Below are positions 278-59,000 of a DNA stretch of 64,000 nt, piece by piece (position 1 is the first letter of the stretch; each line of letters starts with the position of its first letter). Below the pieces are notes generated by a model that had not been told where the DNA came from, made no database searches, and saw only the letters and a program-made list of their open reading frames with translations. The stretch is from Paragordius varius (taxonomy: Eukaryota; Animalia; Nematomorpha): assembly GCA_964247055.1 (NCBI GenBank), contig OZ176060.1:806001-870000 (forward strand). The letters are read 5' to 3'. The position numbers and the translations under genes were made by a program.

Positions 278-348
278 GAATCCAAATCAACTGATAGTGG
301 AAAACAACAGCTGTTTAAAGCCGTTTGGGAAAAATATTCTGCAATTGG
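278..348 (+). CDS. Internal exon of an unidentified gene whose 5' part lies upstream of the window; reads ESKSTDSGKQQLFKAVWEKYSAI(G)
   Basis: GC-richer island after a pyrimidine tract and ttttag acceptor (AG 276-277); open frame from 278; GT donor at 349. It ends in phase 2 (GG) and joins the exon at 1280 (A) to give GGA with the frame maintained. Confidence 0.55.
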
Positions 349-1279: not shown

Positions 1280-1340
1280 ATTCGATGAAGTCTCAAAGAT
1301 GGAACCACCGCCCCCTTATAAAATTCTCATTAATAAATAA
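1280..1340 (+). CDS. Terminal exon of the same unidentified gene; reads FDEVSKMEPPPPYKILINK*
   Basis: ttctttag acceptor (AG 1278-1279), GC-rich codons in ~90% AT surroundings, stop TAA at 1338-1340, phase-compatible with exon 278-348. Product not recognised. Confidence 0.6.
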
Positions 1341-2149
1341 AATATTTTATAAACAGCTGTTTAAAATAAATATTTTTATATCAGCTGTTTGAAATAAATT
1401 TTTTTTATATTAATTTGATTTATTTATATATTTTTATTTTATTTTTTAATTATATATTTAGTTTTAATTCGAGATAAATATTTAAAAGTTTAATAAATCA
1501 GCTGTTTGAAATAAATATTTTTGTAAATATTTTAAATTTATATGTTTGCTTGATATATTACTTTTAAAATATTAAATATAATAAATATATAAATTATTTA
1601 TATAATTTTTGTAATTAGTTATTTTTTATTTTTTTTTATTATATAAATTTATTTATAATTTTTTATATTTTCATTTTATCAATTGAAAAAATTTATAATC
1701 AGCTTAAAATTATTTTTTTATATTATTATTAAATAATTATTATAAAATCTAATTTTTTACAAATTCTTAAAAATATATAATATTTTATAAATCAGCTGTT
1801 TGAAATATTATATTACACCAGCTTATTTTTAAAATCAGCTGTTAAATAATTTTTATAATCAGCTGTTATGAGTGGATTTTTTATTCGTACGTTTGCTTAA
1901 AGGTCACTACCCTCTTTTTAAAAATTTTAAATAAATTTAAAAAAAAACTTTTTATATATCAGCTGTTAATTAAAATATTTTTTATGTTTTATTTTTATCT
2001 AAATATTTGAAAAAAAATGAAAACAATAAATATTTTAATAAATCAGGTGTTTTTAAAAAAAAATATATTTTTATGAATCAGCTGTTTCAATATATTTTTA
2101 TATATTTAATATTTAAATTAATAATAATTAATTCTTCATAAAAGACTGG

Positions 2150-2722
2150 GAAAAAGCAGACCACATTTATATTATAACAAAAAAAAAATATCAAACAAAA
2201 GCAGACGATATTGAACTTTAAATGGCAGACGATTCATAGATTTATATCATAAGGCAAACGATTTAGTATATTTGAAACGACAGACGAATTTATTTCATAT
2301 GAAAAGGCAGACGATTAAATTAAAGGAAAAGGCGCAGACGACAATAATTTTAAAACCCAAAGGCAGACGATAATAAATTTAAATGATAAGGCGCAGACGA
2401 CAATAATTTGAAATCCAACAGCCGATTAAATGAATTTCAAATGAAAAGGCAGACGATTAAATGAACAAATGAATAGGCAGAAGATTAAATGAATTTCAAA
2501 TGAAAAGGTAGACGATATGAATTTCAAATGAATAGGCAGACGATTAAATGAATTTCAAATGAAAAGGCAGACGATTAAATGACAAATGAATAGGCAGACG
2601 ATTAAATGAATTTCAAATGAAAAGGCAGACGATTAAATGACAAATGAATAGGCAGACGATTAAATAAATTTGAAATGACAAAGCGCAGACGATATTAATT
2701 AAAAATCGCAAATCAGACGACA
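2150..2722 (+). repeat. Polar GCAGACGA(T) array 1 (~25-30 bp period)
   Basis: About 15 exact and several variant copies, all in the same orientation; near-perfect 58 bp dimer repeats at ~2520-2660. Confidence 0.9.
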
Positions 2723-2989
2723 TATATTTAAAGTTAAAACCAAAAATATCTAAACTAAAAAAACTAGTAAATAAATAAAATATTCATAAAAAAAATTAAA
2801 TAAAAAATTTAAAAAAAATTAAATTTATTTAATAATTTATATAAATAAGGAGAAAATTTTCAGATATTTTTAAATGAAAATATGAAACTAGAAAACTTTA
2901 TTGCATTAAAAAAAATTTAAAAAAAAATAAAAAAATTAAAAAATTTAAAACTTATAAAATTAAAACTAAAAATTTAATAAAATTAAGAA

Positions 2990-5430
2990 AAATATTTGTC
3001 TTTATATTATTTTACTCAAACAAACAAAAAGAAAATAAAAAATATTATGTAAAATATTTAACTTTAAAAGTATAAAATAAAATAATTAATTTTAATAATA
3101 ATTTACATTATTTAAAATTTATTATTATAGAATTAATTAATTAATTCAAATAATTTATTTTATTCAAATATCAGCTGTTTATGTTTTTTTAAAACAATTA
3201 TTTGTCTTTATATTATTTTACTCAAAAAAAAATAAAAAAGATTAGTTTATGTTTTTTAAAACAATTATGTGTATTTATATTATTTTACTCAAAAAAATGT
3301 TTTTTTTTATTTTTTATTGAATGAAATAAATTATAATAAAATAATTAATTTTAATAATAATTTATTTTATTTAAATATAAAATAAATTAAATTTAATTTA
3401 TTTTATTCAAATCATCAGCTGATTAGTTTATGTTTTTTTAAAACAATTATTTGTCTTTTTATTTTTTAATATTATATATATTATTTTTTTTAAAAATTAT
3501 TAATATATTATATTTTTATAAAATATTTGTTTTTTATAAAAAAAATAGAAAATTATTAATTTAATAAATTTTTATAAATTTAGTTTATGTTTTTAGTTTT
3601 ATTTTTTTATTTCTTTTGAAAAAGAAATAAAATGTGTGTTTCGTTTGATTGAAACAATGCAACAATGTTGTTTTCTAAACACTTTTTTGTTTCTTTTTTT
3701 TTCTTAAGAAAAAGCAAAAAAAAAGATTAGTTTATGTTTTTTTAAAACAATTATTAGTCTTTATATTATTTTATATGAATAATATAATGTTTTTTTTATA
3801 ATATTTCACTCCAAAAGTATTATAAAATAATTAATTTCAATAATAATATATTTTATTTAAATATCAGCTTATTTTAAAACAATTATTTGTCTTTTATTTT
3901 TTTGTTTGAAAAAAAAAGAAAAAAAATGTTTTTTGTTAATTTTATAAAATGTGTGTGTTTCGTTTGGTTGAAACAATGCAACAATGTTGTTTCTAAACAC
4001 ACTTTTTTTGTCTTTTCTTTTTTCTTAAGAAAAAGCAAAAAAAAATAGTTTATGTTTTTTTAAAACAATTATTTGTCTTTTTATTATTTTTGCTTTAAAA
4101 AATGATTTTTTTTATTTTTGAAAAATGATATTTTTTATAAAAAAAGAGAAAATTATTAAATTAATGAATTTTTATAAATTTTTATTTTATTTTTTTTTGT
4201 TTTAATAATAATTTATTTTATTTAAATATCAGCTGATTAGTTTATGTTTTTTTAAAACAATTTTTTCTCTTTTTATTTTTTTACAAATTATTTATATATT
4301 AATGTTTTTATAAAATAATATTTTTTATAAAAAAATAGAAAATCGTTATTTTTGAAAAATGAAATATATTATAATAAAATAATTAATTTTAATAGTAATT
4401 TATTTTATTTTAATATATTATTATTATTATAGAATTAATTAATTATTTAAAATAAATAATTTAATTTATTCTTCAAATATCAGCTGATTATTATTCATTT
4501 ATTTGTTTTTTTTTTAATAAAAATATTTGTCTTTATATTAGTTTATGTTTTTTTAAAACAATTATTTGTCTTTTTATTATTTTTTTTTAATAAAAATATT
4601 TTATTTTTTATTTTTAAATTTTACAAATTATTTATATATTAATATTTTTATAACTAAATAATATTTTTTATAAAAAAATAAAAAATTATTAATTTAATAA
4701 ATTTTTATAAATTTGTTTTATATTTTTTCAAAACAATTATTTGTCTTTATATTATTTTACTCAAAAAAAATATAAAAGATTAGTTTACGTTTTTTTAAAA
4801 CAATTTTTTGTCATTTTATTTTTTTAATAAAATATTTTAATTAAAATTATTGTAAAAAATATTTATATATTAATGTTTTAAAATAATATATTTTAAAAAA
4901 TAGAAAATTATTAAATTAATAATTTTAAATATCACCTGATTGAAACAATGCAACAATGTTGTTTTCTAAACACTTTTTTTTTGTTTCTTTTTTTTTCTTA
5001 AGAAAAAGCAAAAAAAAGATTAGTTTATGTTTTTTTAAAACAATTATTAGTCTTTATATTATTTTTGTTTTAAAAAGTATTTTATAATAATATTTCATTT
5101 CAAAAGTATTATAAAATAATTAATTTTAATAATTATTTATTCTTTAAACATCAGCTGTTTATGTTTTTTGAAAACAATTATTTGTCTTTTTATTTTTTTA
5201 ATATTTTAATTAAAATTATTGTAAAAAATATTTATATATTATATTTTTATAAAATATTTGTTTTTTATAAAACAAATAGAAAATTATTAATTTAATAAAT
5301 TTTTAATTTAATCTATTTTTATTTTATTTTTTTTTAAAACAATTTATTGTCTTTATATTATTTTTCTCAAAAAAAAAAGCTTATTTTATAAATAATTTAT
5401 TTAATTCTTCAAATATCAGCTGTTTAAAAC
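2990..5430. repeat. Degenerate repeat field containing older fragments of the 180 bp satellite unit
   Basis: Recurrent gattagtttatgttttttaaaacaattatttgtc and gattgaaacaatgcaacaatgttg blocks, e.g. ~3640-3745, 3955-4055, 4938-5040. Confidence 0.75.
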
Positions 5431-5433
5431 AAT

Positions 5434-6615
5434 GTTTCGTTTGATTGAAACAATGCAACAATGTTGTTTTCTAAACAAACACTTTTTTTGTTTCTTTTTT
5501 TTTCTTAAGAAAAGAAAGAAAAGAAAAGAAAAGATTAGTTTATGTTTTTAGTTTTATTTCTTTATTTCTTTCTTTATTTCTTTCTTTTGAAAAGAATAAT
5601 AAAATGTGTGTGTGTGTTTCGTTTGATTGAAACAATGCAACAATGTTGTTTTCTAAACAAACACTTTTTTTGTTTCTTTTTTTTCTTAAGAAGAAAGAAA
5701 AGAAAAGATTAGTTTATGTTTTTTAGTTTTATTTCTTTCTTTCTTTCTTTTTCTTTTGAAAAGAATAATAAAATGTGTGTGTGTGTGTTTCGTTTGATTG
5801 AAACAATGCAACAATGTTGTTTTCTAAACAAACACTTTTTTTGTTTCTTTTTTTTCTTAAGAAGAAGAAAGAAAAGAAAAGAAAAGATTAGTTTATGTTT
5901 TTTAGTTTTATTTCTTTCTTTCTTTCTTTTTCTTTTGAAAAGAATAATAAAATGTGTGTGTGTGTGTTTCGTTTGATTGAAACAATGCAACAATGTTGTT
6001 TTCTAAACAAACACTTTTTTTGTTTCTTTTTTTTCTTAAGAAGAAGAAAGAAAAGAAAAGAAAAGATTAGTTTATGTTTTTTAGTTTTATTTCTTTATTT
6101 CTTTCTTTCTTTTGAAAAAGAATAATAAAATGTGTGTGTGTGTGTGTGTTTCGTTTGATTGAAACAATGCAACAATGTTGTTTTCTAAACAAACACTTTT
6201 TTTGTTTCTTTTTTTTCTTAAGAAGAAAGAAAGAAAAGAAAAGAAAAGATTAGTTTATGTTTTTTAGTTTTATTTCTTTCTTTCTTTCTTTTTCTTTTGA
6301 AAAGAATAATAAAATGTGTGTGTGTGTGTTTCGTTTGATTGAAACAATGCAACAATGTTGTTTTCTAAACAAACACTTTTTTTGTTTCTTTTTTTTCTTA
6401 AGAAGAAGAAAGAAAAGAAAAGAAAAGATTAGTTTATGTTTTTTAGTTTTATTTCTTTATTTCTTTCTTTCTTTTGAAAAGAATAATAAAATGTGTGTGT
6501 GTGTGTTTCGTTTGATTGAAACAATGCAACAATGTTGTTTTCTAAACAAACTTTTTTTTTGTTTCTTTTTTTTCTTAAGAAAAAGCAAAAAAAAAAGATT
6601 AGTTTATGTTTTTTA
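5434..6615. repeat. ~180 bp tandem satellite, 7 units
   Basis: Unit starts (gtttcgtttgattgaaacaatgc) at 5434, 5616, 5787, 5966, 6148, 6328 and 6505; internal (GT)n, (CTTT)n and (GAAAA)n tracts vary in length. Confidence 0.95.
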
Positions 6616-6854: not shown

Positions 6855-8020
6855 TATATCGTCTGCTTCAATCCCATTTATAATCTTTAAATAATATCGT
6901 CTCTATTAATTCTAAATACTATCGTCTGATTATAATTTAGTTTATATTATCGCCTGCTTCTAAACATTAATAATAATAATATTTAAAATCGTCTGATTGA
7001 CTTTTATTTATAATCGTCTGACTTTTACTTTAAATAAAATACCGTCTACTCTAGAAACACCAAAATTAAAAATATCGACTGCTTAAATTATATGTATATA
7101 TAATCGTCTGCTTTTACTTTGAATAAAATATCGTCTGCTCTTGAACCCACAAATACAATAAAATCGTCTGCTTGATATTTATTAATAGTATATGTTATCG
7201 TTTGCTCTTAAACACCTAAATTAAAAATATCGACTGCTTAAATTATATGTATATATCGTCTAATTATTAATATTTATAGTATAAATTATCGTCTGCTCTC
7301 CACAAATAAAATAAAATCGTCTGCTTGATATATATAACCGTTTGATAGTTTAAGTTATCGTCTGCTCTTTAACACCTAAATATTAAAAATATCGGCTGCT
7401 TAAATTAAATGTATATATAATCGTCTGATTATTAATATTTAGTATGAATTACCTTCTGCTCATGATGAAAATATAATTAAATCGCCTGCTTTAGTTCTAT
7501 TTAAAATCGTCTGATTTTTAATATTTAGTATAAAAAGATCGTCTGCTTATATATAATCGTCTGATTATTTTAATTTAGTATAAGTTATCATCTGCTCTTA
7601 AACACGAAAAATTATATCATTCCAAATTCACTAATCGTCTGATGTTTACAGTATAAATTATCTTCTGCTCTTAAACACGAAAAATAGTATAACTTCAGTT
7701 CTATGTAAATCGTCTGATTATTAATATTTAGTATAAAAAGATCGTCTGCTTTAGTTCTATATAAATCGTCTGATTATTTTAATTTAGTTAAGTTATCATC
7801 TGCTCTTAAACACGAAAAATCATATCATTCCAAACTTACTAATCGTCTGTTTGTTACTCAGTGTGAATTATCGTCTGCCTTTTACTCAGTGTGAATTATC
7901 GTCTGCCTGTTACTCAGTGTGAATTATCGTCTGCCTTTAACTCAGTGTGAATTATCGTCTGCCCTTCTCCGAAATAATACAATATCGTCTGATTTTTATT
8001 TGGTAAAAATTATCGTTTGA
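6855..8020 (-). repeat. Polar GCAGACGA array 2 (reads TCGTCTGC on +)
   Basis: About 30 atcgtctg(c/a) copies in one orientation; ends with four 28 bp near-perfect repeats at 7854-7963. Confidence 0.9.
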
Positions 8021-8479: not shown

Positions 8480-10745
8480 AAAAATCAGCTGTTTAAAAAT
8501 AATAAAACATATGTTTTATATGATAAATAAAAACTCAAATTTTTTTAAAATCAGCTGATAACATAAATTTATAAAATTATTTTTGTTTTATTAATATATA
8601 TTGTATTAACTTACATATATATATATATATAAACATATCAGCTGTTTAGTTAAAAAACTATATCAAACTAATCAGCTTATTAATGAATAAATAAAAACAT
8701 ATGTTCCAATGAATGATTGAACCAACTTTCTAATTACCTATATTAAATTTTATCCTTAATTAGACGATAACGTAAATAAAAAATTTTAATTTTATATATA
8801 AAAAATATATACGTAAAAGTTATCAGCTGTTTTAGTAAAAATATATAGGAGATGATTATAAAAACACATGTTAAAATGAATGTATGAAAATTTTCTAAAA
8901 ACCCTAAATTTTATAATCAGACGATAACGTAAATAAAAAATTTTAATTTTATATATAAAAAATATAAACGTAAAAATTATCAGCTGTTTTAGTAAAAATA
9001 TATAGCAGATGATTATACATATGTAAAAATGAATGCATGAAAACTTAAATCTAAAAAACCTAAATTTTATCCTTAATCAGACGATAACGTAAATAAAAAA
9101 TTAATTTTATAGGTAAAAATATAAATAAAATAAATGTTATCAGATAATTATATAACTTTCCAATCAGCTGATATATGATAGCATAAAAACATATGTTGAA
9201 ATGAATGGAATAACTATACTTGAAAACTTAAATTTATCCTTAATCAAATAATAACGTAAATAAAAAATTAATTTTATAGTTAAAAATAAAGAAATATTTT
9301 TTTATAAATGTTATCAGCTGATTATAAAACTGTCCAATCAGCTGATTTATGAAAACACAAAAACATATGTTGAAAAGAATGAAATAACCCTAGAAAACTT
9401 AAATTTAATCCTTAATCACAGATAATGACGTAAAAATAAAAAATTAATTTTTACACAAAATTTATATTTTTATTTTTGCAGGTTTATCAAATAATTAATT
9501 AACATTATCAGCTGTGATTTTATCAAATAATAACTTAATCAGCTGATTATGATAAAAAACAATGTTAAATGAGTGCACATAACTTTATAAATACTTAAAT
9601 TTAACCCTTAATCAGATAAAGAGGTAAAAATAATAAATTAATTTATACACAAAATTTATTATTTTATTTTGCAGTTTTATCAAATAATTAATTTACATTA
9701 TCAGCTGTGATTTTTTATCAAATAATAACTTAATCAGCTGATTATGATAAAAAACAATGTTAAATGACTGCACAATAAAATTTTATAAATACTCATAAAA
9801 AATATATAAATATATAATTTTTATTTTTATTATCAGCTGATATTTTTTCACCAACAGGTGATATAAAAATGGAAATCATATGTGTAAATAAACTAATAAA
9901 ATAACTTATAATAAATCTAAAAAACGAAATTAATCCTTAATCAGACGATAACGTAAATAAAAAATTAATTTTATACGCAAAAAATTTAAATATATTTTTT
10001 ATTTGATAAATGTTATCAGCTGATTATTAGACAAAACCCAATCACCTGATTATTTATAAAAATAAAAACATGTGTTGAAATGATGACAAGAATAAACTTT
10101 AAATATCTGTAAAAACGTAAATATAATCTTAAATGTAAATAAAAAATTCATCTATATGTAAAAAATATATATTTTTATTTATTTATTCATTTTATTTGAT
10201 AAAATCTCAACTTTTTTAAGACCTAATCAGCTGATAACATGAATTTATGAAATTATTTTTGCTTTATTAATATATAAGGTGGTATAAAAAGACATAAAAA
10301 CTCAGATGTTTATTAAAAGAGACTATATCAATCTAATCAACTGATTTGTGAAAATAAAAACATGAGTTAAAATGAATTCATGAAATAACTTTATAAAAAC
10401 CTAAAAACGTAGATCTTAATCAGATAATAACGTATATTTATAAAATAAATTTTATACGTAAAAATATATAAATATATATTTTATTTAATATTAAAAAGTT
10501 ATCAGCTGATTATTACACAAATTTGTCTATTCGGGTGATATAGTAGAAACCTAGAAAACGTAATTTTATCCTTATTAATAATAATATAAATAAAATTATT
10601 ATACGCAAAAAATATATAAATATACATTTTTTTTATTCTATATTTCAAAACTTTATCAGCTGCTCATGCTATTCAAACACCTGATTTATAAAAACAGAAA
10701 CGTGTGTTGAAATGAATGCATGAAATAACATTATATAATCGAAAT
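8480..10745. repeat. Degenerate ~165-190 bp tandem repeat downstream of ERp44
   Basis: Recurrent ccttaatcagacgataacgtaaataaaaaattaatttt...ttatcagctg...acatatgttgaaatgaatg units at ~8755, 8915, 9075, 9240, 9415, 9605, 9935 and 10415. Confidence 0.8.
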
Positions 10746-10890
10746 TTATATACAAAAAAATAAAAAAAATTGACAAAAAATAATGTTTTCTAAATATAAT
10801 TTTTTTAAATAATTTGAAAACGAAAAATTTGGAATGATATTTGAAATAAAATAATTTATATATTATAAAATATTCTAAAACATTTTTAAA

Positions 10891-10933
<43 letters not shown>

Positions 10934-11545
10934 TTAAATAAAATCATTAAAAATATTTATGAGCTAATTACGTGGGAATAAGTATTTTTATAAAAAAAAA
11001 ATTTTAAATACATATCTTTGCGGAACAAATAAAGCAATCAATATAAAATAATTTATTTTATAAAAATAAAAAAATATATAAAATATATTTACATATAATA
11101 ATTTTTTCGAAAACATTTTTTTTAATAAATATTAGGAATCAAAACAGCTGATAGGGTAAATAGTAAAATGTAAATTAACGTCAACTTGGTAGGATATTTA
11201 TCAGCTGATTATATTGATAAAAAGTGTTTTAATAAATGAATAGTAAGAATATTTTTTTATAAATCGTAATATTTTTATTGAAAAATAATATATATACAAT
11301 TTTTTAAATAAAATTTTCAAATTGCGCGCGCGATAATATCCAATAATTCCAGAATCAGCTGTTTAAAACCATCTGATTAGTTAACACAGTAAAATGTAAT
11401 ATAAAATCTTTTGCATATTATGTATATTTTTCAAAAAAATTATATTCCATAAAAAATATCTGTTTAACATATTGCAATATTCAGAGCAATTTGTATCATT
11501 TTATCATCTGTTATACCATTTAGCGTGCGGTCAAGATCAGCTGAT

Positions 11546-12290
11546 CTACAATTCATCACGTGGGCTGTATTCATCCTCTAGCATGGAGTAACGCGTGTAA
11601 GATGGTTTGAGTTTACTGAAGACAGATTCGACCTTTTGCGTACTTTGTTGCCCAGTGTAATCAGCTGTTTTGGCATCATCTGGTTGAGCGTTGCCGGGGG
11701 CAACAACAACGTTTCCCAAATCAATGTGTATAACATTGGAGGGCGGTGGTGGCGCGTTACCATGGTGATGCCCATGTTCAGAGTTGTGGAATTCGCGGTC
11801 CAGTTTTTCGCTAAATAAATCAGCCACAAATTGAACCAACAGCTGATGCGATGCGTGACCGGGAACAGCTGATGGTTCAAGCGCACTAAAAGGGTGCGGG
11901 AATGCAAACATGTGTGCAAATGAATCTATGGCAATGAGTGGTAAGTCAGCATCCGTTTTGCCCATATGGTGGAGTGGGTGAGCAAAAACGGTGCTACTCG
12001 CATAAACCGGCTGAATCCGATCGGCCCAAGGTGAATCAGCTGATAGAATGGTTGCCATGACAATGCGTTTGAATGTTTCAATGGCTGCTACGTCACGTCG
12101 TGGATTGTAGAAAAGTATAAGGAGCGGTTTATTCCGTTCCGTAAGCTCTTCAGCATTCTCCCGCGTGATTTCAGGGATACGGGGTGTGCAATGTCGAAAA
12201 ATCCATTCACTCATTCGATCCAACAGCTGATTGCTATCGGCTGATGGCGAAGCAGAAGGGAAATGCTCAATCGTTTGTTCATAAGCTGGT
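11546..12290 (-). CDS. ERP44: ERp44 last exon (b' domain, C-tail, RDEL*)
   Basis: Acceptor tatag (AG 12292-12291), phase 2 join AG|A = Arg giving FYRPAYEQ..., same frame as ORF 11546..12223, stop TAG at 11548-11546. Confidence 0.93.
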
Positions 12291-12298
12291 CTATAGTG

Positions 12299-12338
<40 letters not shown>

Positions 12339-14127
12339 GACCTGCCATCTTATAAGGACACATAAACACATATGTCATATATTTTCATTTTAATCTTAAA
12401 ATTTAAAAAACAAACATTTTTAAAAAATGTAGCACAAACAAACCAAACGCACCTGTAAAATAAAACGTCGTCAGCTGTTTTAGTGGCGGCGTGAGTGGCG
12501 TCAACAGCTGATTTATACTCTGGCCCTCGGGCCACAAAAATGTTACAATCATCTCGCATTAAGAAACCAATCATTTCCAACGTTTTTATTGTCAATTCAT
12601 TCTTTTTCTTTGCACTTTCTGAGGAATCACCCAAAATAGCCACAACAGCTGATTTATTTTCCCGGCTAACATCTGGCACGTGTCTATGATCATATGGCCG
12701 CATGAGTGCATGCAATTGACTGACAGATGTTATTGCATTCACCCGATATGTCAGCTGTGCGTGAATGAATGCGCTTATTGCGCTGGCATCTCTTTGCCCG
12801 CGATATTCTCCACGGCCAGCGCCCAGCCTATAAATACGCCACGTTGGATACTTTGTAATACCAGCTGTGTCTCGAACAGCTGGAAACAGTTCCGCATTCA
12901 GGCGGGCAAACATGACTGTCCTCCGTGGTTCATTCATGTGATCACCTGATTTTGGGGAGGGAAAATATAGAATTCTAATTTATATTAAATAACAAATTAT
13001 TTTACTCATTAAATATTTTTAACAATTATTAGATAATCTATTATTAATATAAAATTTTTATTTTGAGGATTTCATTAAATAATTTTAAATATTTTATTTT
13101 TAACAAAAACATGACTGTCCGCCGTGGTTCATTCATGTGATCACCTGTTTTTAGGGAAATTTATGAAAAAAAAATATATATATATTTTAGATATTTTTTA
13201 AAAATTTTATTATTTTTTGATAAATTTTATAATTTATTTTGAGGATTTCATTAAATTTAAATTATTAATATGCTTTTATTTTTAACAAAAACATGACTGT
13301 CCGCCGTGATTCATTCATGTGATCACCTGTTTTAAGAAGGGAAGGAAAATTTATAGAAAATATGTAAATATATATTAAATAATTTTTTTAAATTTATATA
13401 TTATTTATAATTTTATAATTAAAAAAAGTTGATTAAACTACTTAACTAATAAATATTATTTTTAATTTTTAACAAAAACATGACTGTCCTCCGTGGTTCA
13501 TTCATGTAATCACCTGATTTTAAAAAGGGATTATATATATATATATATTATAAATTATATTAAATAACAAATATTCATAAAAATTTTTAACAATTATTAG
13601 ATAAACTATTATTGATATAATATTTTTATTTTAAATTTTTAAATATTTGAAATTTTATTATTTTTAGATCTTAATTAACTGTCCGACGTGGTTCATTCAT
13701 GTAATCACTGATGAAGGGAAATCAATTGAAATGTTTTATTATAAATTAATTCAGTTATATTTTCAATTTATACATATATATAATAATGAGATTGAATATA
13801 TTTTTAAAAATTTTAAACTAATAAATGTTTTGTTTTATATTTTAATTTTTTAATAAAAATTGGTTTCATTCACGTGATCACCTGTTTTTTGATCATAAAA
13901 ATAAATATATATATATATATATATATATTTATAATAATAATATTTAAAGGTAGTTAATTATAAATTTTCTTATTTTAATAGCTGATAATAAAAGGAATAA
14001 ATCTATTTAATATTTTAGTTCATACACTGATCACCTGTTTATATACATATAAATAATTATAAATTATATTAAATCTAAATTATACAAATATATACAAAAG
14101 AATTTATATATTAATTATATATATATA

Positions 14128-14158
<31 letters not shown>

Positions 14159-16169
14159 CATAAAATTTAAAGGTAGTTAATTATAGATTTTCTTTTATTG
14201 ACTGATAATAAAATAATTTTATTCCATATTTCAGTTCATTCACCTGGTCACCTATTTTTCCCGGGAAAAATATAAATAAAATAAAATAAAACAAAATAAA
14301 AATTTCATTTATATAATTAACATTTTTTTATTGTCATTTTAAGCATTAAATCATTACATCACCTGATTTTAAGGAAATAAGGATAAATTGATACAAAATT
14401 ATATATTCGTTAAGTTTTTAATTTAAATTTTGGCCGCTAAACAAATTTTTCATTTATTAAAATCAATTTAAATAAAACTGTTGAAATGATAATTTAAACA
14501 AATTAAATGTTGTTCTGTAATCACCTGTTTTTGAGGAAAAATAAAATAATAATATAAACAAAAATCCTTTAATTTTAAACAAATTTAATGAGGTTCATTC
14601 ACGTAATCACCTGTTTTAAAGAATAAATAGTCATAAATGAAATGATTATTTTAAGCAAATTGAATGTTGTTCATTCATGTAATCACCTGTTTTTGATTTA
14701 AAAAATAAATAGACAAATCCTAAAATGATTATTTTTAACAAATTAAATGTTGTTAATCATGTAATCACCTGATTTTGTAGGGGGATTATTTCAAAAATAT
14801 AACCATAAATCATGTAATAAATAAATATTATAAGAGAATTAAAATGGTTATTTAGAGAATTTTTTTAAAAAAAAATTTAATATATAATTAATCAATTCAA
14901 ATTTAGCCCACCTTGAATAATAAATTATGTATTTTTAAACTATAATATAACTCCTTATTAATAAGAAATACATCTTTATTGAGTATAGTTTATTATTTTT
15001 CTAGTTATATATATATGATAATTTAAAATTAAATTATTTAATTTTTTGAAATAATATTTAAAAATATAGCTAATTTATTATTTAAGGGTAAACAGCTGAT
15101 TTATCAAAAGAGGAAATTTTTCAAATGAGGAATTAAATAAAAAAGATTAAAATTGATTCAAAACGTAAAAACAGCTGATCTATTAGAAAAAATATGAAAA
15201 CTACCAATTTTATTAACTAGATATTAATTAATTATCTAAAACATCCATTCATTTTTAAAAATTCAAATCAACATCAAAATTTCAAACCAATGTATAATTT
15301 AATGAAAACAGCTGATCATATTTTTAAAAAAGCTACCAATCTTATTGATTAGGTAAAAAATATTTTATAATTTTAACCACATTAAAATAAAGCTTTAAAA
15401 TTTTAAATGTCATCAATTGATAACAGCTAATTTTTTTAACAAAAATTAATATAAAAACAGGTGATATGTTTTTTTAAAAAAACAGCCAACTATTTATGTT
15501 TTTTTTGTTAAATATGTTTAAAATTTAAAAAAACATTTCATAGAAAAAGTTAAAAAGACTAAACCAGCTGATTTAAGACATGTGTTTATTTTATTCCACA
15601 TTACTTAAAACCCAAATAAAAATAATTTTTTATATATAAAAATGTTTGTTTACCAGCTGATTTTATGCTTTTTATACAATATTTCTTCAAAAAATTAATT
15701 AACACAAAAATAAATTTACTTTTATAAATTTTAGTTGAAATATAAAACTTTATTTGCATAAAATATATTAATTTACCAGCTTATTTTATCAAAAAATAAC
15801 TTTTAAAAAAACAATTATTGCCAGGTGATTTTATATTTTAAACAATTATTAACTTTAAAAATAAAATATTTAACAGCTGATTTTATATTTTTAACAAATA
15901 ATAATTTTTAGAATACCGGCTGATAATATATTTTTGACAAAAATAAACTCAGAAAATAAATTTTAATAAATTATTACCAGCTGATTTTATAATTTCCGCC
16001 TCCTTTTGGAGTTTGTCCACCAGCTGTTTCCATGCTTCCGTGAAAATGGGATTTGACATTTGACTAAAAGGGCACCAATCGGCATAAAAATTTACGAAAA
16101 CTAAATCGTAACCTTTTATGGTTCGGTTAAAAGTTTCATCTGTTAACTCTTCCGGTTCGGAGGGAAAAT
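11546..16169 (-). CDS. ERP44: ERp44 (ER-resident thioredoxin-domain protein 44); confident part = join(16169..15978, 12945..12453, 12290..11546)
   Basis: Hand translation gives VFVNFYADWCPFSQM (family motif VNFYADWCRFSQM), ITKYPT...EYRGQR, EITRENAEELTE..P.LILF, HPLHH.GKT.ADLPLIAIDSF.HM and a C-terminal S.F.KLKPS..RYS.L...RDEL. All introns are GT-AG with matching phases. Confidence 0.93.
12453..12945 (-). CDS. ERP44: ERp44 exon (end of a domain and b domain)
   Basis: Acceptor aaatcag|GTGATCAC, donor TACAG|gtgcgt; 493 nt, phase 1 to phase 2; same frame as ORF 12350..12937. Confidence 0.9.
13108..14775 (-). repeat. Tandem degenerate echoes of the ERp44 acceptor and exon start (cag|GTGATCACATGAATGAACCACGG..GACAGTCATG)
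   Basis: Near-complete copies at ~13110, 13292, 13479 and 13678; progressively shorter copies to ~14770. Confidence 0.9.
15085..15975 (-). repeat. Degenerate echoes of the ERp44 exon end and donor (AAAATCAGCTG|gtaa)
   Basis: On +, copies of the ttaccagctgatttt type at ~15560, 15650, 15772, 15818, 15870 and 15915, decaying away from the exon. Confidence 0.65.
15978..16169 (-). CDS. ERP44: ERp44 exon carrying the thioredoxin a-domain motif WCPFS
   Basis: Not in the ORF track. 192 nt between aaacag| and |gtaata; reads FPSEPEELTDETFNRTIKGYDLVFVNFYADWCPFSQMSNPIFTEAWKQLVDKLQKEAEIIKSA(G). Confidence 0.92.
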
Positions 16170-16526: not shown

Positions 16527-17292
16527 AAAGTTCATCTGTTAACTCTGCAGGTTCGGACGGAAAATCTAAAAATATGAATTTAAGTATTTTAAATGAAAAA
16601 TTATTTTTAAAAAATTAAAAAATAATTTAAAATATATTTAAAAAAGTTTGAAATTTTAAAAAAAATATTATAAAAAGTTTTAAATTTAATAAAAAATCAT
16701 ATCAGTTAATTAATTAATAAGTTAGAAATAAAAATTTTTAATTTATAAAAAAACATCTTTTAATAAATGTTTCATCTTTTAATAAAATATGAATTAAAAA
16801 AAATTAAATCAATATAAATTATTTTTTTCAAAAAAAAATTAAGTAATATTTAAAAAAAAATATAAAAATTATTTAAAATAGAATAAATTTAAACTTAATA
16901 TATTTAAAAATTAAAAGTTTCATCTGTTAACTCTAAGGGTTCGGACGGGAAATCTAACATAAAATTTATGAAAAATATAAAAAATTTAAATTTTAAATAA
17001 ATTTTTAACTAATTTATAAAATTTTAAATATTAAAAAAAAGTTTAATTGTAAATTCTACTAAATAATAACAAAATTAACTTTAAAAGGTAAAAAAAGTGT
17101 TATAAAAAAGTTTTACAATGTATAATTTTAAATTTATTAAAAATAATTTATTATATTAAAATAAATTTAAAAAAAATTTATAAAAAATTTCAAAGTTGTA
17201 AAATTTATATAATAAATTATTAGTTTTTAATAAAAAAATTTAATTTTAAAAATAAATTTTTAAAAAAATCATCTGTTAACTCTTGTGGTTAA
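16527..17292 (-). repeat. Echoes of the acceptor and first ~40 nt of ERp44 exon 16169-15978
   Basis: ttcatctgttaactct..ggttcgga.ggaaaatct copies at ~16527-16568, 16916-16955 and a partial at 17268-17292. Confidence 0.85.
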
Positions 17293-17799
17293 AATTTTTT
17301 TTCTATATAAAATCAAATAAAAAAATGTTAAAAATGAAAAAATAATAAATTTTCAAAAAAATGTTTAAAATTGTAATTATTTAATTTAATAAAGTTTAAA
17401 AAATATTATTATTTAAAAAATTTTAAAATTTTTAAAACAAATCTTTTATGATAAAAAAATTTAATTTACACTTTATAAAAATTACAATAAAATTATGCGA
17501 ATTCAATCAATTATTAATTTTTGTTTTAATTCATAAAAAAGTAAAAAATATTTTATTAAATTATTAAAAAATTATTTATTATACAAAAAAATATAATAAA
17601 TATATATATATATATATATATTAAAAATTTTTATAGATAATAAAAATATTTTTAAAATTTTTAAATAAAAAAAAATACAAAAACATACATTTACGGCGTG
17701 AACAAAACATTAATATTTTAATATAAGTTTTTTTAATAAATTTACATGTTAAACATGGTTTCATTATTATATATATATATATATATATGTATGTATATA

Positions 17800-20703: not shown

Positions 20704-22142
20704 ATAAAAATAAAAAAATAAAATTATTACATTTAAAAAATTAATTAAATAAAAATAAAATTAATAAATTTCAAACTTTAAAATAAAAAAAATTTAATAA
20801 AAATAAATTAAATAAAATTTTTATTTAAAATTAGATTAAAGCTAAAAAGTAAATTAAAAAAAAATTATTAATAAATTTAAAAATTAACTAAATTTAATAA
20901 TAAAGTTTATTTAAAAAAAATAAAAATTTATTAATAAAATAAAAAAATTAAATTAAAAATAATTTTTGAAAACTAAATTAAAAATTTCATTTTTTAACAT
21001 AAAAAATTGAAATTATAAAAAATTAAATTAAAATTATTAAAATAATTAATTAAATTAAAAAATAATTTTAAATAAATTAATATTTATCGATAAAATTTTA
21101 AAATATGAATTATTTTTTGATTTTTTAAAAAAAATTAAAGTAAAAAAATAAATTTTATTTAATTCTAAAATTTACAAAAAAAATATTTTATTATATCCTA
21201 AAAAAATTACGAAAAGATTTACTAAATATATAAAACTAATTTCATATAAATAAATAATTTTTAATAATTTTATATTATTATAAAATAATTATCTAAAAAA
21301 CTAATTTTAATAATATAACAATAAATAAAATTAAACTAGACTAAATAATTTAAATAATTTTAAAACTCAATTTTTTAAACAAAATAAAAATTTGAAATTA
21401 ATAAAAATTTAAATAAATACATTATTAATAATTTTTTAAAACATAAGATTTTAATCTAAAAAAATTAAATAATTTTTCAAAAACTTACAAATTTTAAAAT
21501 TAAAAAAAAAAACTAAATTTATAACATCAAAAGTAAAAAAAATTAAATTAATATTAATTTTTATAATTTTTTAAAACTTAATTTAAAATTTAAAAACTAT
21601 AAATATTAAATTAAAAATATAAATAAGTTTTAAAATTTTTATAATTTTAAATTTATAAAATTTAAAGCTTAAAAAATTAAAATCACAATAAATTGATATT
21701 AATTTTTAAAAATTGTTTAATTTTATGATAATTTTATATAAATTATTTATTAGAATAATTTAAATAACTAATGTAATTTTTTAAAACTATAAATATTAAA
21801 TTAAAATTATAAAATAAGTTTTATAATTTTAATTTCTCAAATCTTTATAAAACTCATTTAAACTTAAAAAAATTAAATAGTTTTCAAAACTAATAAAATT
21901 TAAAAATTAAAAATAATTTAACTAATTTTTATATTTTTAAAACCAAAAATATTAAATTAAAAATATGAAATAAGTTTTATATTTTAAATTTTTAAAATTT
22001 AAAACAAAAATTTATAGATTTTGAAAATTTAAAATCTAAAATAAAACTAATTATAATAATTTTTATAATTTTTAACAATTAATAAAATTTTAAACAAAAA
22101 TTTATAGATTTTGAAAATTTCAAAACTAAAATAAATTTATAC

Positions 22143-22536
22143 TTTGAAAACTTTGGGGTGAATTTAAATTTTTTTCTTTTTCTTGATGATTTAAATTTTG
22201 TTGAGAATTTTGGTTTTTACTTTGTTGTGAAACAATGTTGCTTTCAATCCGATTATTTATTAAATTTTCTTTATGATTTAATTGCGGAGTTAAAAAACCA
22301 CCATCTTTAGAATCAAAAACTTCATTTGAATTTAAATTCTGTTCTTGATTAACATTTTGATTCAAATTTTGATCTTGTTTCGGAGTTATAAAACCACCAT
22401 CTTTGGAATCAAAAACTACATTTGAATTCTGTTCTTGAACATTTTGTTGATAATTTCCTGAAACATAAAAATAAAAAGTTGCTAAAAAATAAATTTGCCA
22501 AAAAAGTGAATTTGAGGTGAAAAATAAAATTTCCAT
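22143..22536 (-). CDS. ERP44: Candidate ERp44 first exon: signal-peptide-like N-terminus plus Q/N-rich region with a duplicated VFDSKDGGF motif
   Basis: ORF 22126..22536 begins MEILFFTSNSLFWQIYFLATFYFYVSG (hydrophobic core, V-S-G cleavage-like). Phase-1 donor CAA A|gtataa at 22142 is compatible with the exon at 16169, and a GC-richer leader lies at 22537-22580. Linkage to ERp44 is inference; it could belong to another transcript. Confidence 0.45.

Positions 22537-24589: not shown

Positions 24590-24590
<1 letters not shown>
24180..24590. repeat. Degenerate ~20-25 bp repeat (aacattttt(t)aagcaaaa) flanking the large satellite
   Basis: At least 10 imperfect copies seen. Confidence 0.65.
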
Positions 24591-41682
<17,092 letters not shown>

Positions 41683-44170: not shown

Positions 44171-44194
44171 TCTATTTATAATCATCTGTTTTCT

Positions 44195-56036: not shown

Positions 56037-59000
56037 ATATATTTAAATAAAATTTAAAAAATTAATTTTTATTAATAAATTTATTCACAGCTGATTTTTT
56101 TTATAAAAATTAATATTAAAAATTATATATATATATATATTTAGTTTAATGAAAAAAAAATAAATTGTGAAAATTATATATTTTTAATTTTTTTTTTTAT
56201 AAAATAAAATTTAATAATGTTTAATTTTTATTTTTTTAAAATTATTTTTTATTTTAATTTTATTTTAGACCCATTTGGTGACATTAACATTGATAAAGAC
56301 ACATCAGCTGATAGCTATATTCATATTCGTATTCAACAAAGGAATGGTCGAAAAACTCTAACTACAGTTCAAGGCATAGCTCCCGAGTATGACCTTAAAG
56401 AAATTGTCAGAGCTTGTAAAAAAGTAAGTAAATACTTGAATTTATCGAGTTTTAACTTGAAAGAATGAAGTTTTTTTGATAATTTTTGAGTATAAATAAC
56501 GCTTAAACTCGAAAAATTGAAGTTTTTTGATAATTTTTAAGTAAATACTTGAAAAAATATGAGTAAAACTCGAAAAACACTAACTACAGTTCAAGGCATA
56601 GCTCCCGAGTATGACCTTAAAGAAATTGTCCGGGCTTGTAAAAAAGTAAGTAATTACTTGAAAAAATTAAGTTTTAAAGGTTTTAACTTGAAAAAATGGG
56701 TAAAAAAAAGAGTTTTTTTGAAAATTTGTGAGTATAAATAACGCTTAAACTTGAAAAAAAGCGAGTAAAACTCGAAAAATTAAAGGTTTTTTGATAATTT
56801 TTGAGTTTAATTTAAAGAAATTGTCAGTTGTAAAAAAGTAAGCAAATACTTGAAAAATTAAAGAAAATTTATAGTTTTTAAGTAAATACTTGAAAAAATT
56901 AAAGTTTTTGGTTGAAAAATGACCTTTTTTTGATAATTTTTAAGTAAATACTTGAAAAAATGAAAGTTTTTGGTTGAAAAATGACCTTTTTTTGTTAATT
57001 TTTGAGTACGACCTTCAAGAAATTGTCAGAGCTTGTAAAAAAGTAAGTAAATACTTGAAAAAATCAAGTTTTAACTTGAAAAAAATTGGTAAAAAAAGAG
57101 TTTTTGAGTAAATACTTGAAAAAATGAAAGAAAATTGAAGATTTTTGGTAAAAATAACTCTAAACTCGAAAAAATAATTCTTTAACTTAAAAAATTAGAG
57201 AAAACTTGAAAAATGGAGTATTTCTGAGATATTTTAAGTAAATACTTGAAAAAAAGCGAGTAAAACTCGAAAAAATGAAGTTTTTGATAATTTTCGAGTT
57301 TAAATTACCCCCGAGTATGATCTTAAAGAAATTGTTAGAGCTTGTAAAAAAGTAAGTTTAGACTTGAAAAAACCAAGTTTAGACTTGAAAAATGAATTTT
57401 TATCGTAAAAATTGAAGTTTTTAAGTAACTTGAAAAAATGAAGAAAATAGATAGTTTTTGAATAAAAATGAAAGTTTTTGAAAAAAATTTAAAAAATTTG
57501 ATAGTTTTTCAGTAAATACTTGATAAAAGCGAGAACTCGAAAAAATGAAGTTTTTTTGATAATTTTTGAGTAAATACTTGAAAAAATGAAAGTTTTCGGT
57601 TGAAAAACGACCTTTTTTGGTAAAAATTGAAGTTTTTTTGATATTTTTTGCGTATGACCTTAAAGAAATTGTCCGGGTTTGTAAAAAAGTAAGTAAATAC
57701 TTGAAAAAAACAAGTTTAGACTTGAAAAAAAGGTAAAAATGAGAGTTTTTTGAGTAAATACTTGAAAAAATGAAAGTTTTTGGTTGAAAAATGACTTTTT
57801 TTGATAATTTTTGAGATTAAACTCGAAAAAATAAGTCTAAACTCGAAAAAATTTGAGTTTTTAGGTAAAGAATGAGTTTTTAAGCAAAAACTTGAAAAAA
57901 ATGAATAACATGAAAAATTCATCTTGTAAAAATGTAAGTAAATACTTGAAAAATTTAAGTTTATACTCGAAAAATTAAAGAAAATTGATAGTTTTGAGGT
58001 AAAACCTTGAAAAAATGAAAGTTTTTGGTTGAAAAATTTTATTATTAGAAGTTTTTTTGATAATTTTTGAGATTAACTTAAAGAAATTCATAGCTTGTAA
58101 AAAAGTAAGTAAATACTTGAAAAAATGAAAGTTTTTGGTTGAAAAATTAAGAAAATTGATAATTTTGAGGTAAATACTTGAAAAAAAATGCGAGTATAAC
58201 TCGAAAAATTGAAGTAAAACTCTAAAAATTGAATTTGATAATTTTTGAGTTTATTAAAGAAATTGTCAGAGCTTATAAAAAAGTAAGTAAATACTTGAAA
58301 AAATCACACTCCTTAGTTTTTGAATAAAATTTTAAATAAAATATGTTTTTAGATTTTTTATTCAAATCATCTCCAATATAATTTTATATAGAAAACTGAA
58401 GAATCTAAGAATTTAATAAACCTAGTATCTGCGAATTTTTAAAATATTTAAAATCAGGTGATTTCGAACAAATTAATGTATAATATATAGAGTAACTTAA
58501 GATCTTTTAAAATTTTTTGATATTTTATTTCTTTTATACATTCATTGATCACCTGATTTTTTCTAGGAATTTGCCTGTAATGGAACTGTGATTGAACACC
58601 CCTTAGTTTTTAAATAAAATATATTTTTAAAAGACCTATTTGTAGTAGCCACATGATTTCTTACATTCATTCATTGATCACCTGATTTTTTACATGAATT
58701 ATATAGGAATTTGATTGTAATGGTACTGTGATTGAACACACCCCTTAGTTTTGAATAAAATTTTAACTAAAATATATTTTTAAAGACATTTTACTTTTTA
58801 GTATACATTCATTCATTAATCAGCTGATTTTTTAGGAATTTTAATGGAACTGTGATTGAACACCCCTTAGTTTTTGAATAAATTTTTATTTAAAATATGT
58901 TTTGACATATTTGTGGTAATCTTTTTATCATTCATTCATTGATCACCTGATTTTAGTTCAATTATCTAGGCTTTTACCTGTAATGGAACTGTGATTGAAC

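What the first reader, a model, noticed from the sequence alone, without database searches (positions are those of the whole stretch)
11546..16169. The CAGCTG motif has invaded ERp44 coding sequence and shapes the protein
I count 13 exact CAGCTG in 1430 coding nt (11662, 11840, 11866, 12037, 12224, 12472, 12505, 12646, 12752, 12862, 12877, 15978, 16021), against roughly 0.3 expected from composition. They occur in different frames and strands (SAD, TAD, SAV, TAG, QL), often in stretches that look like insertions relative to canonical ERp44. One more, as the perfect palindrome GATCAGCTGATC, lies a few bases past the stop, and eIF1 (TSADS) and gene 1 (QQLF) carry it too. This parallels bacterial DNA-uptake sequences accumulating in tolerant coding positions, and I know of no described equivalent in animal exons.
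Basis: partly seen in the sequence, partly recalled or inferred. Interest (0 to 1): 0.85.

Follow-up and report, generated by a model that had tools for sequence, protein, structure and literature searches.

The report
Hyper-abundant CAGCTG palindrome written into exons
In this very AT-rich horsehair-worm genome the 10-letter palindrome A-W-CAGCTG-W-T is written about once per 110 bases into the ERp44 coding sequence, by codon choice and by amino-acid changes. This resembles the unexplained "highly iterated palindromes" of cyanobacteria, and I found no description of it in animals.

Summary
All 13 CAGCTG sit at the stated coordinates, in a 1,428-nt ERp44 coding sequence rebuilt from three exons. 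Synonymous-codon shuffles that keep the protein give 1.7 (maximum 7; 0 of 5,000 reach 13).

The real word is the 10-bp palindrome A-W-CAGCTG-W-T, and it is set at the DNA level:
- Ala is GCT in 9/10 motif-compatible contexts against 9/38 elsewhere.
- Gln is CAG in 4/5 cases before Leu against 1/10 elsewhere.
- The flanking A(-2) and T(+2) are enforced at synonymous third positions.
- No copy lies in the frame that would need Cys, Trp or a stop.

The protein carries 10 [S/T/P/A]-A-[V/A/D/E/G] tripeptides and 5 QL dipeptides, against 1-6 and 1-2 in four orthologs.

The nearest relative found is the horsehair worm Gordionus (47-49% identity). It has no CAGCTG in its ERp44 coding sequence and one in 21.5 kb, so the invasion is specific to this lineage.

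Non-coding copies lie in tandem "echo" repeats of exon edges, and some of them decay.

The mechanism is unknown. My best guess is a recognition site for a dimeric DNA-binding or DNA-modifying protein, kept by selection or by biased repair.

First readers of this scan noted the same motif in at least seven other stretches of this genome. No paper I could search describes it.

The parts
15978..16169 (-). ERp44 exon A: thioredoxin domain start and CPFS active site. It ends exactly at ...ATCAGCTG|GTAATA.
   Evidence: The frame is open across the junction and it aligns to the NFYADWC.FS block of orthologs.
12453..12945 (-). ERp44 exon B. Its first ~25 nt derive from a dispersed repeat module.
   Evidence: AlphaFold model, mean pLDDT 82.
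11546..12290 (-). ERp44 exon C: Thioredoxin_6 domain, His-rich tail, RDEL, stop codon TAG at 11546-11548.
   Evidence: AlphaFold model, mean pLDDT 79.
16021..16026 (.). CAGCTG, frame 0, encodes K-QL-V.
   Evidence: Gordionus has GAA GTC here.
15978..15983 (.). CAGCTG, frame 1, encodes S-A-G. It forms the last six bases of exon A, just before the donor site, inside a 16-residue lineage-specific insertion.
12877..12882 (.). CAGCTG, frame 1, encodes P-A-V.
   Evidence: In a helix on the model.
12862..12867 (.). CAGCTG, frame 1, encodes T-A-G.
12752..12757 (.). CAGCTG, frame 0, at a QL conserved in most orthologs. Here only the codon choice makes the motif.
   Evidence: Gordionus has CAA ATA.
12646..12651 (.). 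CAGCTG, frame 1, encodes K-S-A-V. It is one non-synonymous step from the Gordionus K-S-S-V.
   Evidence: In a beta-strand on the model.
12505..12510 (.). CAGCTG, frame 1, encodes K-S-A-V-D.
12472..12477 (.). CAGCTG, frame 1, encodes K-T-A-D, in a 7-residue insertion.
   Evidence: Disordered on the model.
12224..12229 (.). CAGCTG, frame 0, encodes N-QL-L, in a 6-residue insertion.
12037..12042 (.). CAGCTG, frame 1, encodes L-S-A-D-S, next to a 4-residue insertion.
   Evidence: In a loop on the model.
11866..11871 (.). CAGCTG, frame 1, encodes P-S-A-V-P, with a 2-residue insertion.
   Evidence: In a loop on the model.
11840..11845 (.). CAGCTG, frame 0, encodes H-QL-L. Gordionus has H-N-L-L (CAT AAT CTT TTA).
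   Evidence: At a helix start on the model.
11662..11667 (.). CAGCTG, frame 1, encodes K-T-A-D-Y in the disordered C-terminal tail.
11534..11547 (.). 14-bp perfect palindrome AGATCAGCTGATCT overlapping two bases of the stop codon.
8486..11543 (.). 3' flank of ERp44 with 21 CAGCTG, lying in tandem repeats of 155-195 bp. The same repeat slot alternates between CAGCTGAT, CAGACGAT, CAGATAAT and CAAATAAT.
12946..15977 (-). ERp44 intron 2. Copies of the donor edge (AAATCAGCTGKT; 6 intact CAGCTG plus decayed ones) lie toward its 5' end. Copies of the acceptor plus exon-B start (CAGGTGATCAC..., ~185-bp period) lie toward its 3' end.
   Evidence: (family D2). Places 13618-13657 were not sent to any search tool.
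56305..56310 (.). CAGCTG in the eIF1 exon at 56270-56416, encoding T-S-A-D-S. Copies of it at 55331 and 55793 lie in upstream intron copies of the exon start.
308..313 (.). Sixteen more copies at 11-2084 lie in AT-rich copies of CAGCTGTTTRAAATAAAT.
   Evidence: I did not build a gene model for gene 1.

Best explanation
The window comes from a horsehair worm (Nematomorpha) whose non-coding DNA is only 5-15% G+C. In this lineage the 10-bp palindrome A-W-CAGCTG-W-T has become a hyper-abundant genomic word. It is imposed on double-stranded DNA whether or not that DNA codes for protein.

Shown. In ERp44 the word is written in three ways:
- by synonymous codon choice;
- by the third-position bases flanking the core;
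- by amino-acid replacement, giving QL and [S/T/P]-A-[V/D/G].
It appears only in the two reading frames the protein can bear.

Inferred. The exact, two-fold symmetric word is the recognition site of a dimeric sequence-specific protein. This could be an E-box factor of the AP-4/bHLH type or a DNA-modifying enzyme. The site is needed at intervals of roughly 100-200 bp across gene bodies and 3' flanks. It is kept there by selection on the DNA, perhaps helped by biased repair.

Partly shown. Many non-coding copies are passengers. They are multiplied when exon edges that carry the word are tandemly duplicated into introns and flanks. There they partly decay.
For: The excess is real:
- 83 copies against 0.5 expected in the window, 188-fold over composition.
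- 13 against 1.67 in the coding sequence under protein-preserving shuffles.

The DNA level is shown:
- Ala GCT in 9/10 compatible contexts against 9/38 elsewhere (P=2e-4).
- Gln CAG in 4/5 cases before Leu against 1/10 elsewhere (P=0.017).
- At synonymous third positions, T at +2 in 8/9 sites (P=0.001) and A at -2 in 7/9 (P=0.002).

The symmetric 10-mer: A at -2 in 77/83 copies and T at +2 in 74/83.

Sharp specificity: 13 exact copies against 7 one-mismatch copies, where shuffles give 1.7 and 10.7.

Frame 2, which would need Ser-Cys, Ser-Trp or a stop, is never used.

Lineage specificity: Gordionus has 0 in its coding sequence and 1 in 21.5 kb. Another animal's ERp44 locus has 4 in 17 kb.

Spacing is more even than random, with CV 0.65 against 0.95 (P=0.008) and P=0.0004 when CAGGTG is included.

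Only this palindrome is in excess; other palindromes are not.

CAGCTG is a known E-box core-promoter element in another ecdysozoan, Drosophila (PMC3375229, PMC1779564).

Non-coding copies lie in copies of exon edges.
Against: - No protein, methylation or chromatin data exist for this organism, and I had only this one window.
- If the word were a promoter-type E-box it should lie at 5' ends. There is none between 16027 and 44220, which includes everything upstream of exon A.
- Transcription-factor sites usually tolerate variants, yet here the exact hexamer dominates in exons.
- In non-coding repeats the word decays (CAGATA, CAAATA, TAGCTG) and swaps with CAGACG in the same slot. Selection there is therefore weak or absent.
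- The even spacing is partly a by-product of tandem repeats. In the exons alone it is marginal (P=0.05).
- Selection strong enough to override amino-acid choice at thousands of sites is a heavy load.
Confidence: 0.45

Rival explanations
1. Molecular drive without function. A sequence-specific repair or conversion bias makes the exact hexamer a near-absorbing state. Examples are a very-short-patch-like correction of T:G mismatches inside CAGCTG, a methylation-protected site, or biased gene conversion toward the motif. The word then accumulates wherever it is tolerated, exons included.
For: - Exact copies outnumber one-mismatch copies 13 to 7, where shuffles give 1.7 and 10.7.
- In the non-satellite part of the window the deamination products TAGCTG/CAGCTA (2 against 4.2 expected) and CAGTTG/CAACTG (7 against 4.2) are few beside 83 intact sites.
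- Near-cognate ancestral codons appear 'perfected' to the motif, for example K-S-S-V to K-S-A-V.
- Enzyme-like exactness and a PvuII-type palindrome.
- HIP1 in cyanobacteria co-occurs with cognate methyltransferases (PMC4390886).
Against: - Large stretches have none (16.0-44.2 kb and 49-55 kb), although a uniform drive should act everywhere.
- Non-coding copies do decay.
- There is no G+C halo around sites.
- No enzyme has been identified, and no known animal system does this.
Confidence: 0.25
2. Spread by repeats or mobile elements. The word is the core of a dispersed or tandem repeat family, or a transposon end or footprint. Exons acquire it by insertion or by short-patch ectopic conversion from the many repeat copies.
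For: - Most non-coding copies lie in 155-195-bp tandem repeats and in copies of exon edges.
- The module AAAATCAG[G/C]TGATnAATGAATGAATG has more than 30 copies, and it supplies the acceptor and first codons of exon B.
- About 5 of 13 exonic sites lie in or beside insertions.
- Two exonic sites and an intron copy share ATAAATCAGCTGTT.
Against: - About 8 of 13 exonic sites are substitutions with no length change.
- There are no target-site duplications. The conserved flanks (A at -2, T at +2, W at -1 and +1) are part of the palindrome itself.
- Beyond about 3 nt the exonic flanks are unrelated to each other.
- Insertions of 8-10 bp would shift the frame.
Confidence: 0.12
3. RNA-level signal. AUCAGCUGAU acts in the transcript, either as a splicing or exon-definition element or by pairing of any two palindrome copies to fold the pre-mRNA across the huge AT-rich introns.
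For: - One copy forms the last six bases of exon A, directly before the donor site, and donor-like copies fill the intron.
- Any two copies of a palindrome can pair with each other.
- According to earlier notes the genome has unusual introns: tiny ones of 21-26 nt plus multi-kb introns built of exon-edge copies.
Against: - Two-fold symmetric flank preferences point to double-stranded DNA read by a dimer, not to a single-stranded RNA-binding site.
- The word is equally dense in the 3 kb beyond the stop codon.
- It shows no fixed relation to the other splice sites; intron 3 has none.
- No RNA data could be obtained.
Confidence: 0.08
4. Chance, codon bias, hidden mini-introns or an assembly artefact.
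For: The genome composition is extreme, which can distort naive expectations. This genome is reported to have 21-26-nt introns that could hide inside open frames.
Against: - All shuffles fail to reach 13.
- Codon choice depends on context.
- No AT-rich in-frame GT..AG segment of 18-33 nt exists in the coding sequence. The two in-frame candidates that end at a CAG are 56-62% G+C and align to Gordionus residues.
- Four runs from two samples of one study hold 86-96% of the sampled words of this stretch.
Confidence: 0.02

Closest known systems
HIP1, the highly iterated palindrome GCGATCGC of cyanobacteria (PMC5861425, PMC4390886)
   Same: Both are short perfect palindromes, tens to hundreds of times over-represented. 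Both lie inside coding sequence beyond what codon usage allows. Both show a hint of quasi-regular spacing, and in both the function is unresolved.
   Different: HIP1 is bacterial, 8 bp and G+C-rich in moderate-G+C genomes, and it has known cognate methyltransferases. Here the genome is an animal nuclear genome of about 15% G+C, the word is 10 bp, no enzyme is known, and the distribution follows domains (gene bodies and 3' flanks).
DNA uptake sequences (DUS/USS) of Neisseria and Pasteurellaceae (from my own knowledge)
   Same: A hyper-abundant 9-12-nt word that accumulates in tolerant coding positions and biases peptide content. It is usually explained as a molecular drive.
   Different: Uptake sequences are not palindromes, and they depend on natural transformation. 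An animal germ line has no known equivalent of that.
CAGCTG E-box: bHLH/AP-4-type site and Drosophila housekeeping core-promoter element (PMC3375229, PMC1779564). The extended form AWCAGCTGWT is recalled from memory only.
   Same: The same hexamer. As I recall it, the same A-W...W-T flanks. It is read by dimeric proteins, and it is used in another ecdysozoan.
   Different: Known E-boxes are sparse and sit just upstream of transcription starts or in enhancers. Here the word occurs about every 110-150 bp through exons, introns and 3' flanks, and it is absent upstream of exon A.
Coding palindromes in horsehair-worm mitochondrial genes (PMC6649704, PMC10380579)
   Same: The same phylum, and inverted-repeat DNA embedded in and translated as part of protein-coding genes.
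   Different: Those are long (up to 284 bp), diverse in sequence and mitochondrial. Here a single fixed 10-bp word in nuclear genes is involved, with no general excess of palindromes.

Membership tests
ERp44 (the host gene) | Thioredoxin domain with a CxxS active site, followed by thioredoxin-like b/b' domains | tested here: met
   Pfam Thioredoxin_6 at 2.2e-20; Thioredoxin weak at 1e-3. NFYADWCPFS aligns to NFYADWCRFS. The best hits are named ERp44.
ERp44 (the host gene) | C-terminal RDEL retrieval signal | tested here: met
   The protein ends ...SPRDEL and then the stop codon.
Highly iterated palindrome (HIP1-like) | Short perfect palindrome, 15- to 300-fold over-represented | tested here: met
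   83 against 0.44-0.5 expected, about 188-fold. The flanks extend it to a 10-bp palindrome.
Highly iterated palindrome (HIP1-like) | Present in coding sequence beyond the codon-usage expectation | tested here: met
   13 against 1.67 under synonymous shuffling. Codon choice depends on context.
Highly iterated palindrome (HIP1-like) | Quasi-periodic spacing | tested here: inconclusive
   CV 0.65 against 0.95 (P=0.008), but tandem repeats contribute. In the exons alone P=0.05.
Highly iterated palindrome (HIP1-like) | Cognate DNA methyltransferases that recognise the word | not testable with these tools
   Only one 64-kb window of the genome was available. The scan notes list no such enzyme.
Core-promoter or enhancer E-box | CANNTG core with bHLH-type flanks | tested here: met
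   CAGCTG with A at -2 (77/83) and T at +2 (74/83). The consensus it is compared with is from memory; a text search for AWCAGCTGWT found nothing.
Core-promoter or enhancer E-box | Sparse, and concentrated just upstream of transcription starts | tested here: not met
   Density is 1 per about 110 nt in exons and 1 per about 145 nt in the 3' flank. There is none in 16027-44220, upstream of exon A.
DNA uptake sequence | Bias caused by sequence-specific DNA uptake during natural transformation | not testable with these tools
   There is no known transformation in animals. This is an analogy only.
Transposon end or excision footprint | Target-site duplication, or a length change at each site | tested here: not met
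   About 8 of 13 exonic sites are same-length substitutions relative to Gordionus. The conserved flanks are palindromic, not duplicated.
Horsehair-worm coding palindromes (mitochondrial type) | Long perfect inverted repeats of varied sequence within genes | tested here: not met
   Palindromes other than CAGCTG are not in excess in the coding sequence: 6-mers 18 against 21.9, 8-mers 6 against 5.3.

The most novel reading that the evidence does not exclude
An animal nuclear genome carries its own 'highly iterated palindrome'. A lineage-specific system, either a dimeric DNA-binding or DNA-modifying protein or a sequence-specific repair bias, has seeded A-W-CAGCTG-W-T at roughly nucleosome-scale intervals through gene bodies. 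In doing so it has rewritten codons and amino acids proteome-wide. That would be the first eukaryotic counterpart of HIP1 or uptake sequences, and a measurable case of DNA-level pressure overriding protein sequence in an animal.
Probability: 0.55. Interest if true: 0.88.

Novelty: new variant of a known kind. Interest (0 to 1): 0.8.

Why it matters
If this holds genome-wide, it is a second layer of information written over animal coding sequence, strong enough to change amino acids. ERp44 alone carries about 13 such sites.

The contrast with the background is unusually clean. The word stands out about 190-fold against a 15% G+C sea, which makes it suited to asking what maintains hyper-abundant words. 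That question is still open after 30 years for cyanobacterial HIP1.

It also bears on:
- how extreme AT bias and G+C-rich exons coexist;
- gene prediction and ortholog alignment in this phylum;
- whether the tandem copying of exon edges that builds this genome's large introns is linked to the motif.

Tried and rejected
- **Read laying.** I therefore have no RNA evidence for the exons and no variant data, and the related 'organism B' (0.19 of the sampled words) could not be compared.
- **Hidden mini-introns as the cause of the 'insertions'.** Rejected.
- **Recombination or repair halo.** There is no G+C rise within 100 bp either side of non-coding motifs: 0.10-0.19 against a background of 0.157.
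- **General palindrome-making process, as in horsehair-worm mitochondrial DNA.** Rejected.
- **Identifying the species.** Only the phylum could be inferred. Dicyema (36.7% G+C) and Henneguya (29% G+C) were considered and dropped.
- **Gordionus locus.** The look-up of encoding contigs found no record for P0010, but its near-identical cluster mate P0162 gave the locus.
- **Upstream open frame.** The open frame 22129-22536 (minus strand), with a signal-peptide-like start, shows no similarity to the Gordionus N-terminus. The first ERp44 exon remains unfound.
- **Literature.** Nothing was found for CAGCTG with AT-rich genomes, for AWCAGCTGWT, or for CAGCTG with horsehair-worm terms.


Full report
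**Observation.** CAGCTG occurs 83 times in the 64-kb window, against 0.5 expected from dinucleotide-preserving shuffles (largest 3).

I rebuilt the gene from the sequence. ERp44 lies on the minus strand with exons 16169-15978, 12945-12453 and 12290-11546. Joined, they give one open frame of 1,428 nt ending ...RDEL-TAG. Pfam finds Thioredoxin_6 (2.2e-20), and database hits are named ERp44 at 36-47% identity (39-40% for the top two). An upstream exon with the signal peptide was not found.

**Is it more than chance?** Yes. Expected counts in the coding sequence are 0.45 (shuffle within codon positions), 0.74 (codon order permuted) and 1.67 (synonymous codons shuffled, protein kept). The largest value in 5,000 synonymous shuffles is 7.

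Four copies are in frame 0 (CAG CTG = QL) and nine in frame 1 (xCA GCT Gxx). None is in frame 2, which would need Ser followed by Cys, Trp or a stop. By my arithmetic the chance of that is (2/3)^13 = 0.005.

**The word is longer than six bases and is set at the DNA level.**
- Across all 83 copies, position -2 is A in 77 and position +2 is T in 74. Positions -1 and +1 are A or T. The word is therefore the palindrome A-W-CAGCTG-W-T.
- Nine of the 13 exonic copies fit ANCAGCTGNT.
- In frame-1 copies the flanking positions are synonymous third positions, yet T at +2 occurs in 8/9 (background 0.34, P=0.001) and A at -2 in 7/9 (background 0.27, P=0.002).
- Ala is GCT in 9/10 motif-compatible contexts against 9/38 elsewhere (P=2e-4).
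- Gln is CAG in 4/5 cases before Leu against 1/10 elsewhere (P=0.017).
- Exact copies (13) outnumber one-mismatch copies (7), whereas shuffles give 1.7 and 10.7.
- No other palindrome is in excess in the coding sequence.

**Does it shape the protein?** Nine of the ten [S/T/P/A]-A-[V/A/D/E/G] tripeptides and four of the five QL dipeptides are encoded by the word. The two exceptions are TCAGCCGAT and CAATTG. Four orthologs have only 1-6 and 1-2 such peptides.

Two AlphaFold models were made, for the exon C reading frame (mean pLDDT 79) and for exon B (mean pLDDT 82). Ten sites map onto them: five in coil or disordered segments, four in helices and one in a strand. The sites are tolerated positions, but not only loops.

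**Whose genome, and is the invasion lineage-specific?** An exhaustive profile search gave one clearly best relative: ERp44 of the horsehair worm Gordionus sp. (172 bits, next best 119; 49% identity over the query, 47% over the whole pairwise alignment). It shares lineage-specific traits:
- a CP[F/Y]S active site instead of CRFS;
- the H-x-S-H-x-L-L insertion;
- the PSYTRY motif.

The window is therefore most likely from a horsehair worm, as two earlier follow-ups in this scan also concluded. I could not name the species.

The Gordionus gene is intronless and 29% G+C. It has no CAGCTG, and its 21.5-kb locus (24% G+C) has one. Another animal's ERp44 locus has 4 in 17 kb.

Codon by codon, about eight of the 13 sites are same-length substitutions. 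Examples are AAA TCA TCT GTC in Gordionus against AAA TCA GCT GTT here, and CAT AAT CTT TTA against CAT CAG CTG TTG. About five lie in or beside insertions. None of the 'insertions' is a hidden mini-intron.

**Surroundings.**
- *Domains.* The word is confined to 11-5422, 8486-16026, 44221-48665 and 55331-61304. There is none in 16027-44220, which holds everything upstream of exon A and a 17-kb satellite.
- *Tandem repeats.* Non-coding DNA here is built of tandem repeats of 155-195 bp and 28-31 bp.
- *Copies of exon edges.* Introns carry decaying copies of the adjacent exon edges. There are copies of the ERp44 intron-2 donor (AAATCAGCTGKT), of the exon-B acceptor plus its first ~45 nt, of the exon-A acceptor, and of the eIF1 exon start including its CAGCTG. 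Much of the non-coding abundance is thus copied from exon edges.
- *Decay.* In aligned repeat units the same slot reads CAGCTGAT, CAGACGAT, CAGATAAT or CAAATAAT. So the word does decay outside exons.
- *No halo.* There is no G+C rise around non-coding copies.
- *Other abundant words.* GCAGACGAT has 137 copies of its CAGACG core (111 with the fuller CAGACGAT), in strand-polar arrays that occupy the stretches lacking CAGCTG. CACCTG has 57-60 copies, mostly inside the module AAAATCAGGTGATnAATGAATGAATG.
- *Spacing.* Spacing within the ERp44 domain is more even than random (CV 0.65 against 0.95, P=0.008). Repeats contribute to this, and the exons alone give P=0.05.

**How it most likely works.**

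Shown: a lineage-specific, exact, two-fold symmetric 10-bp word is imposed on DNA regardless of coding. It costs synonymous freedom and amino-acid identity, and it respects the reading frame only by avoiding the frame that would be harmful.

Inferred: two-fold symmetry and exactness point to double-stranded DNA read by a dimer, either an E-box factor or a restriction-modification-like enzyme. The density suggests one site is needed every 100-200 bp in gene bodies. The site would be maintained by selection, or by a repair or conversion bias that makes the exact word hard to lose. I put about 0.45 on the recognition-site reading.

I put 0.25 on pure drive, 0.12 on spread from repeats or mobile elements, 0.08 on an RNA-level role and 0.02 on artefact.

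**Comparison with what is known.**
- The closest parallel is HIP1 of cyanobacteria (PMC5861425, PMC4390886). It is a palindrome, hyper-abundant, present inside genes beyond codon usage, quasi-periodic and still unexplained.
But they are not palindromes and need natural transformation.
- CAGCTG is a known E-box core-promoter element in Drosophila (PMC3375229, PMC1779564). The hexamer matches, but the location test fails here.
- Horsehair-worm mitochondria carry long coding palindromes (PMC6649704). That is the same phylum and the same oddity of inverted repeats in genes, but a different scale and no fixed sequence.
- No paper in the searchable library pairs CAGCTG with horsehair worms or describes such a word in animal exons.
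- First readers of this scan noted the same motif in at least seven other stretches of this genome. Those are unchecked notes, not independent evidence.

**Limits.** I had one window only. The species is not identified. The AWCAGCTGWT consensus for AP-4 and the fly promoter E-box is from my memory.

Noticed in passing
window 2202-2714 (+), 6860-7986 (-), 16-22 kb (+), 44-46 kb (-): A second hyper-abundant word, GCAGACGAT, has 137 copies of its CAGACG core (111 with the fuller CAGACGAT). It forms dense arrays that keep one strand, at 28-31-bp spacing, and they occupy the stretches that lack CAGCTG. In some repeat units it sits in the same slot as CAGCTGAT.
   Followed up: partly
window 12930-14671, 41947-44991, 46614-49044, 58667-61291: The dispersed module AAAATCAG[G/C]TGATnAATGAATGAATG has more than 30 copies. 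The acceptor site and first ~25 nt of ERp44 exon B are one such copy, so part of the exon derives from a repeat.
   Followed up: partly
window 16540-17300; 13075-13523; 15060-15980; 55297-55810; 56559-57700: Introns contain tandem, decaying copies of the neighbouring exon edge. Copies of the acceptor plus exon start lie upstream of the true acceptor. Copies of the exon end plus donor lie downstream of the true donor. Periods are about 185, 390 and 460-510 bp.
   Followed up: partly
window 11546-16169 against L001:10001-11470: The ERp44 coding sequence is 46% G+C here (GC3 0.40), inside non-coding DNA of 5-15% G+C. The Gordionus ortholog is 29% G+C in a 24% background and has no introns. This gene has at least three introns, since exon A begins at an acceptor site.
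   Followed up: partly
window 16080-16110: The ERp44 active site reads CPFS; Gordionus has CPYS. The canonical form in other animals is CRFS. This may be a trait of the phylum.
   Followed up: no
window 48665-48700 and 49033-49070 (+ strand): Inverted extra copies of the ERp44 exon-B start (...ATCACATGAATGAACCACG...) lie 36 kb away from the gene. One has CAGCTG where the gene has CAGGTG.
   Followed up: no
window 24590-41700: A 17-kb satellite of (TAA/ATT)n-rich units with a fixed, G+C-skewed cassette. It holds no CAGCTG.
   Followed up: no
window 5433-6615: A clean 179/362-bp tandem repeat (94% matches, 6.7 copies) with CT-rich cores. It holds no CAGCTG.
   Followed up: no
window 22129-22536 (- strand): An open frame of 136 codons with a signal-peptide-like start and an N/Q-rich body lies upstream of ERp44. 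It shows no similarity to the Gordionus ERp44 N-terminus, so its status is unknown.
   Followed up: partly
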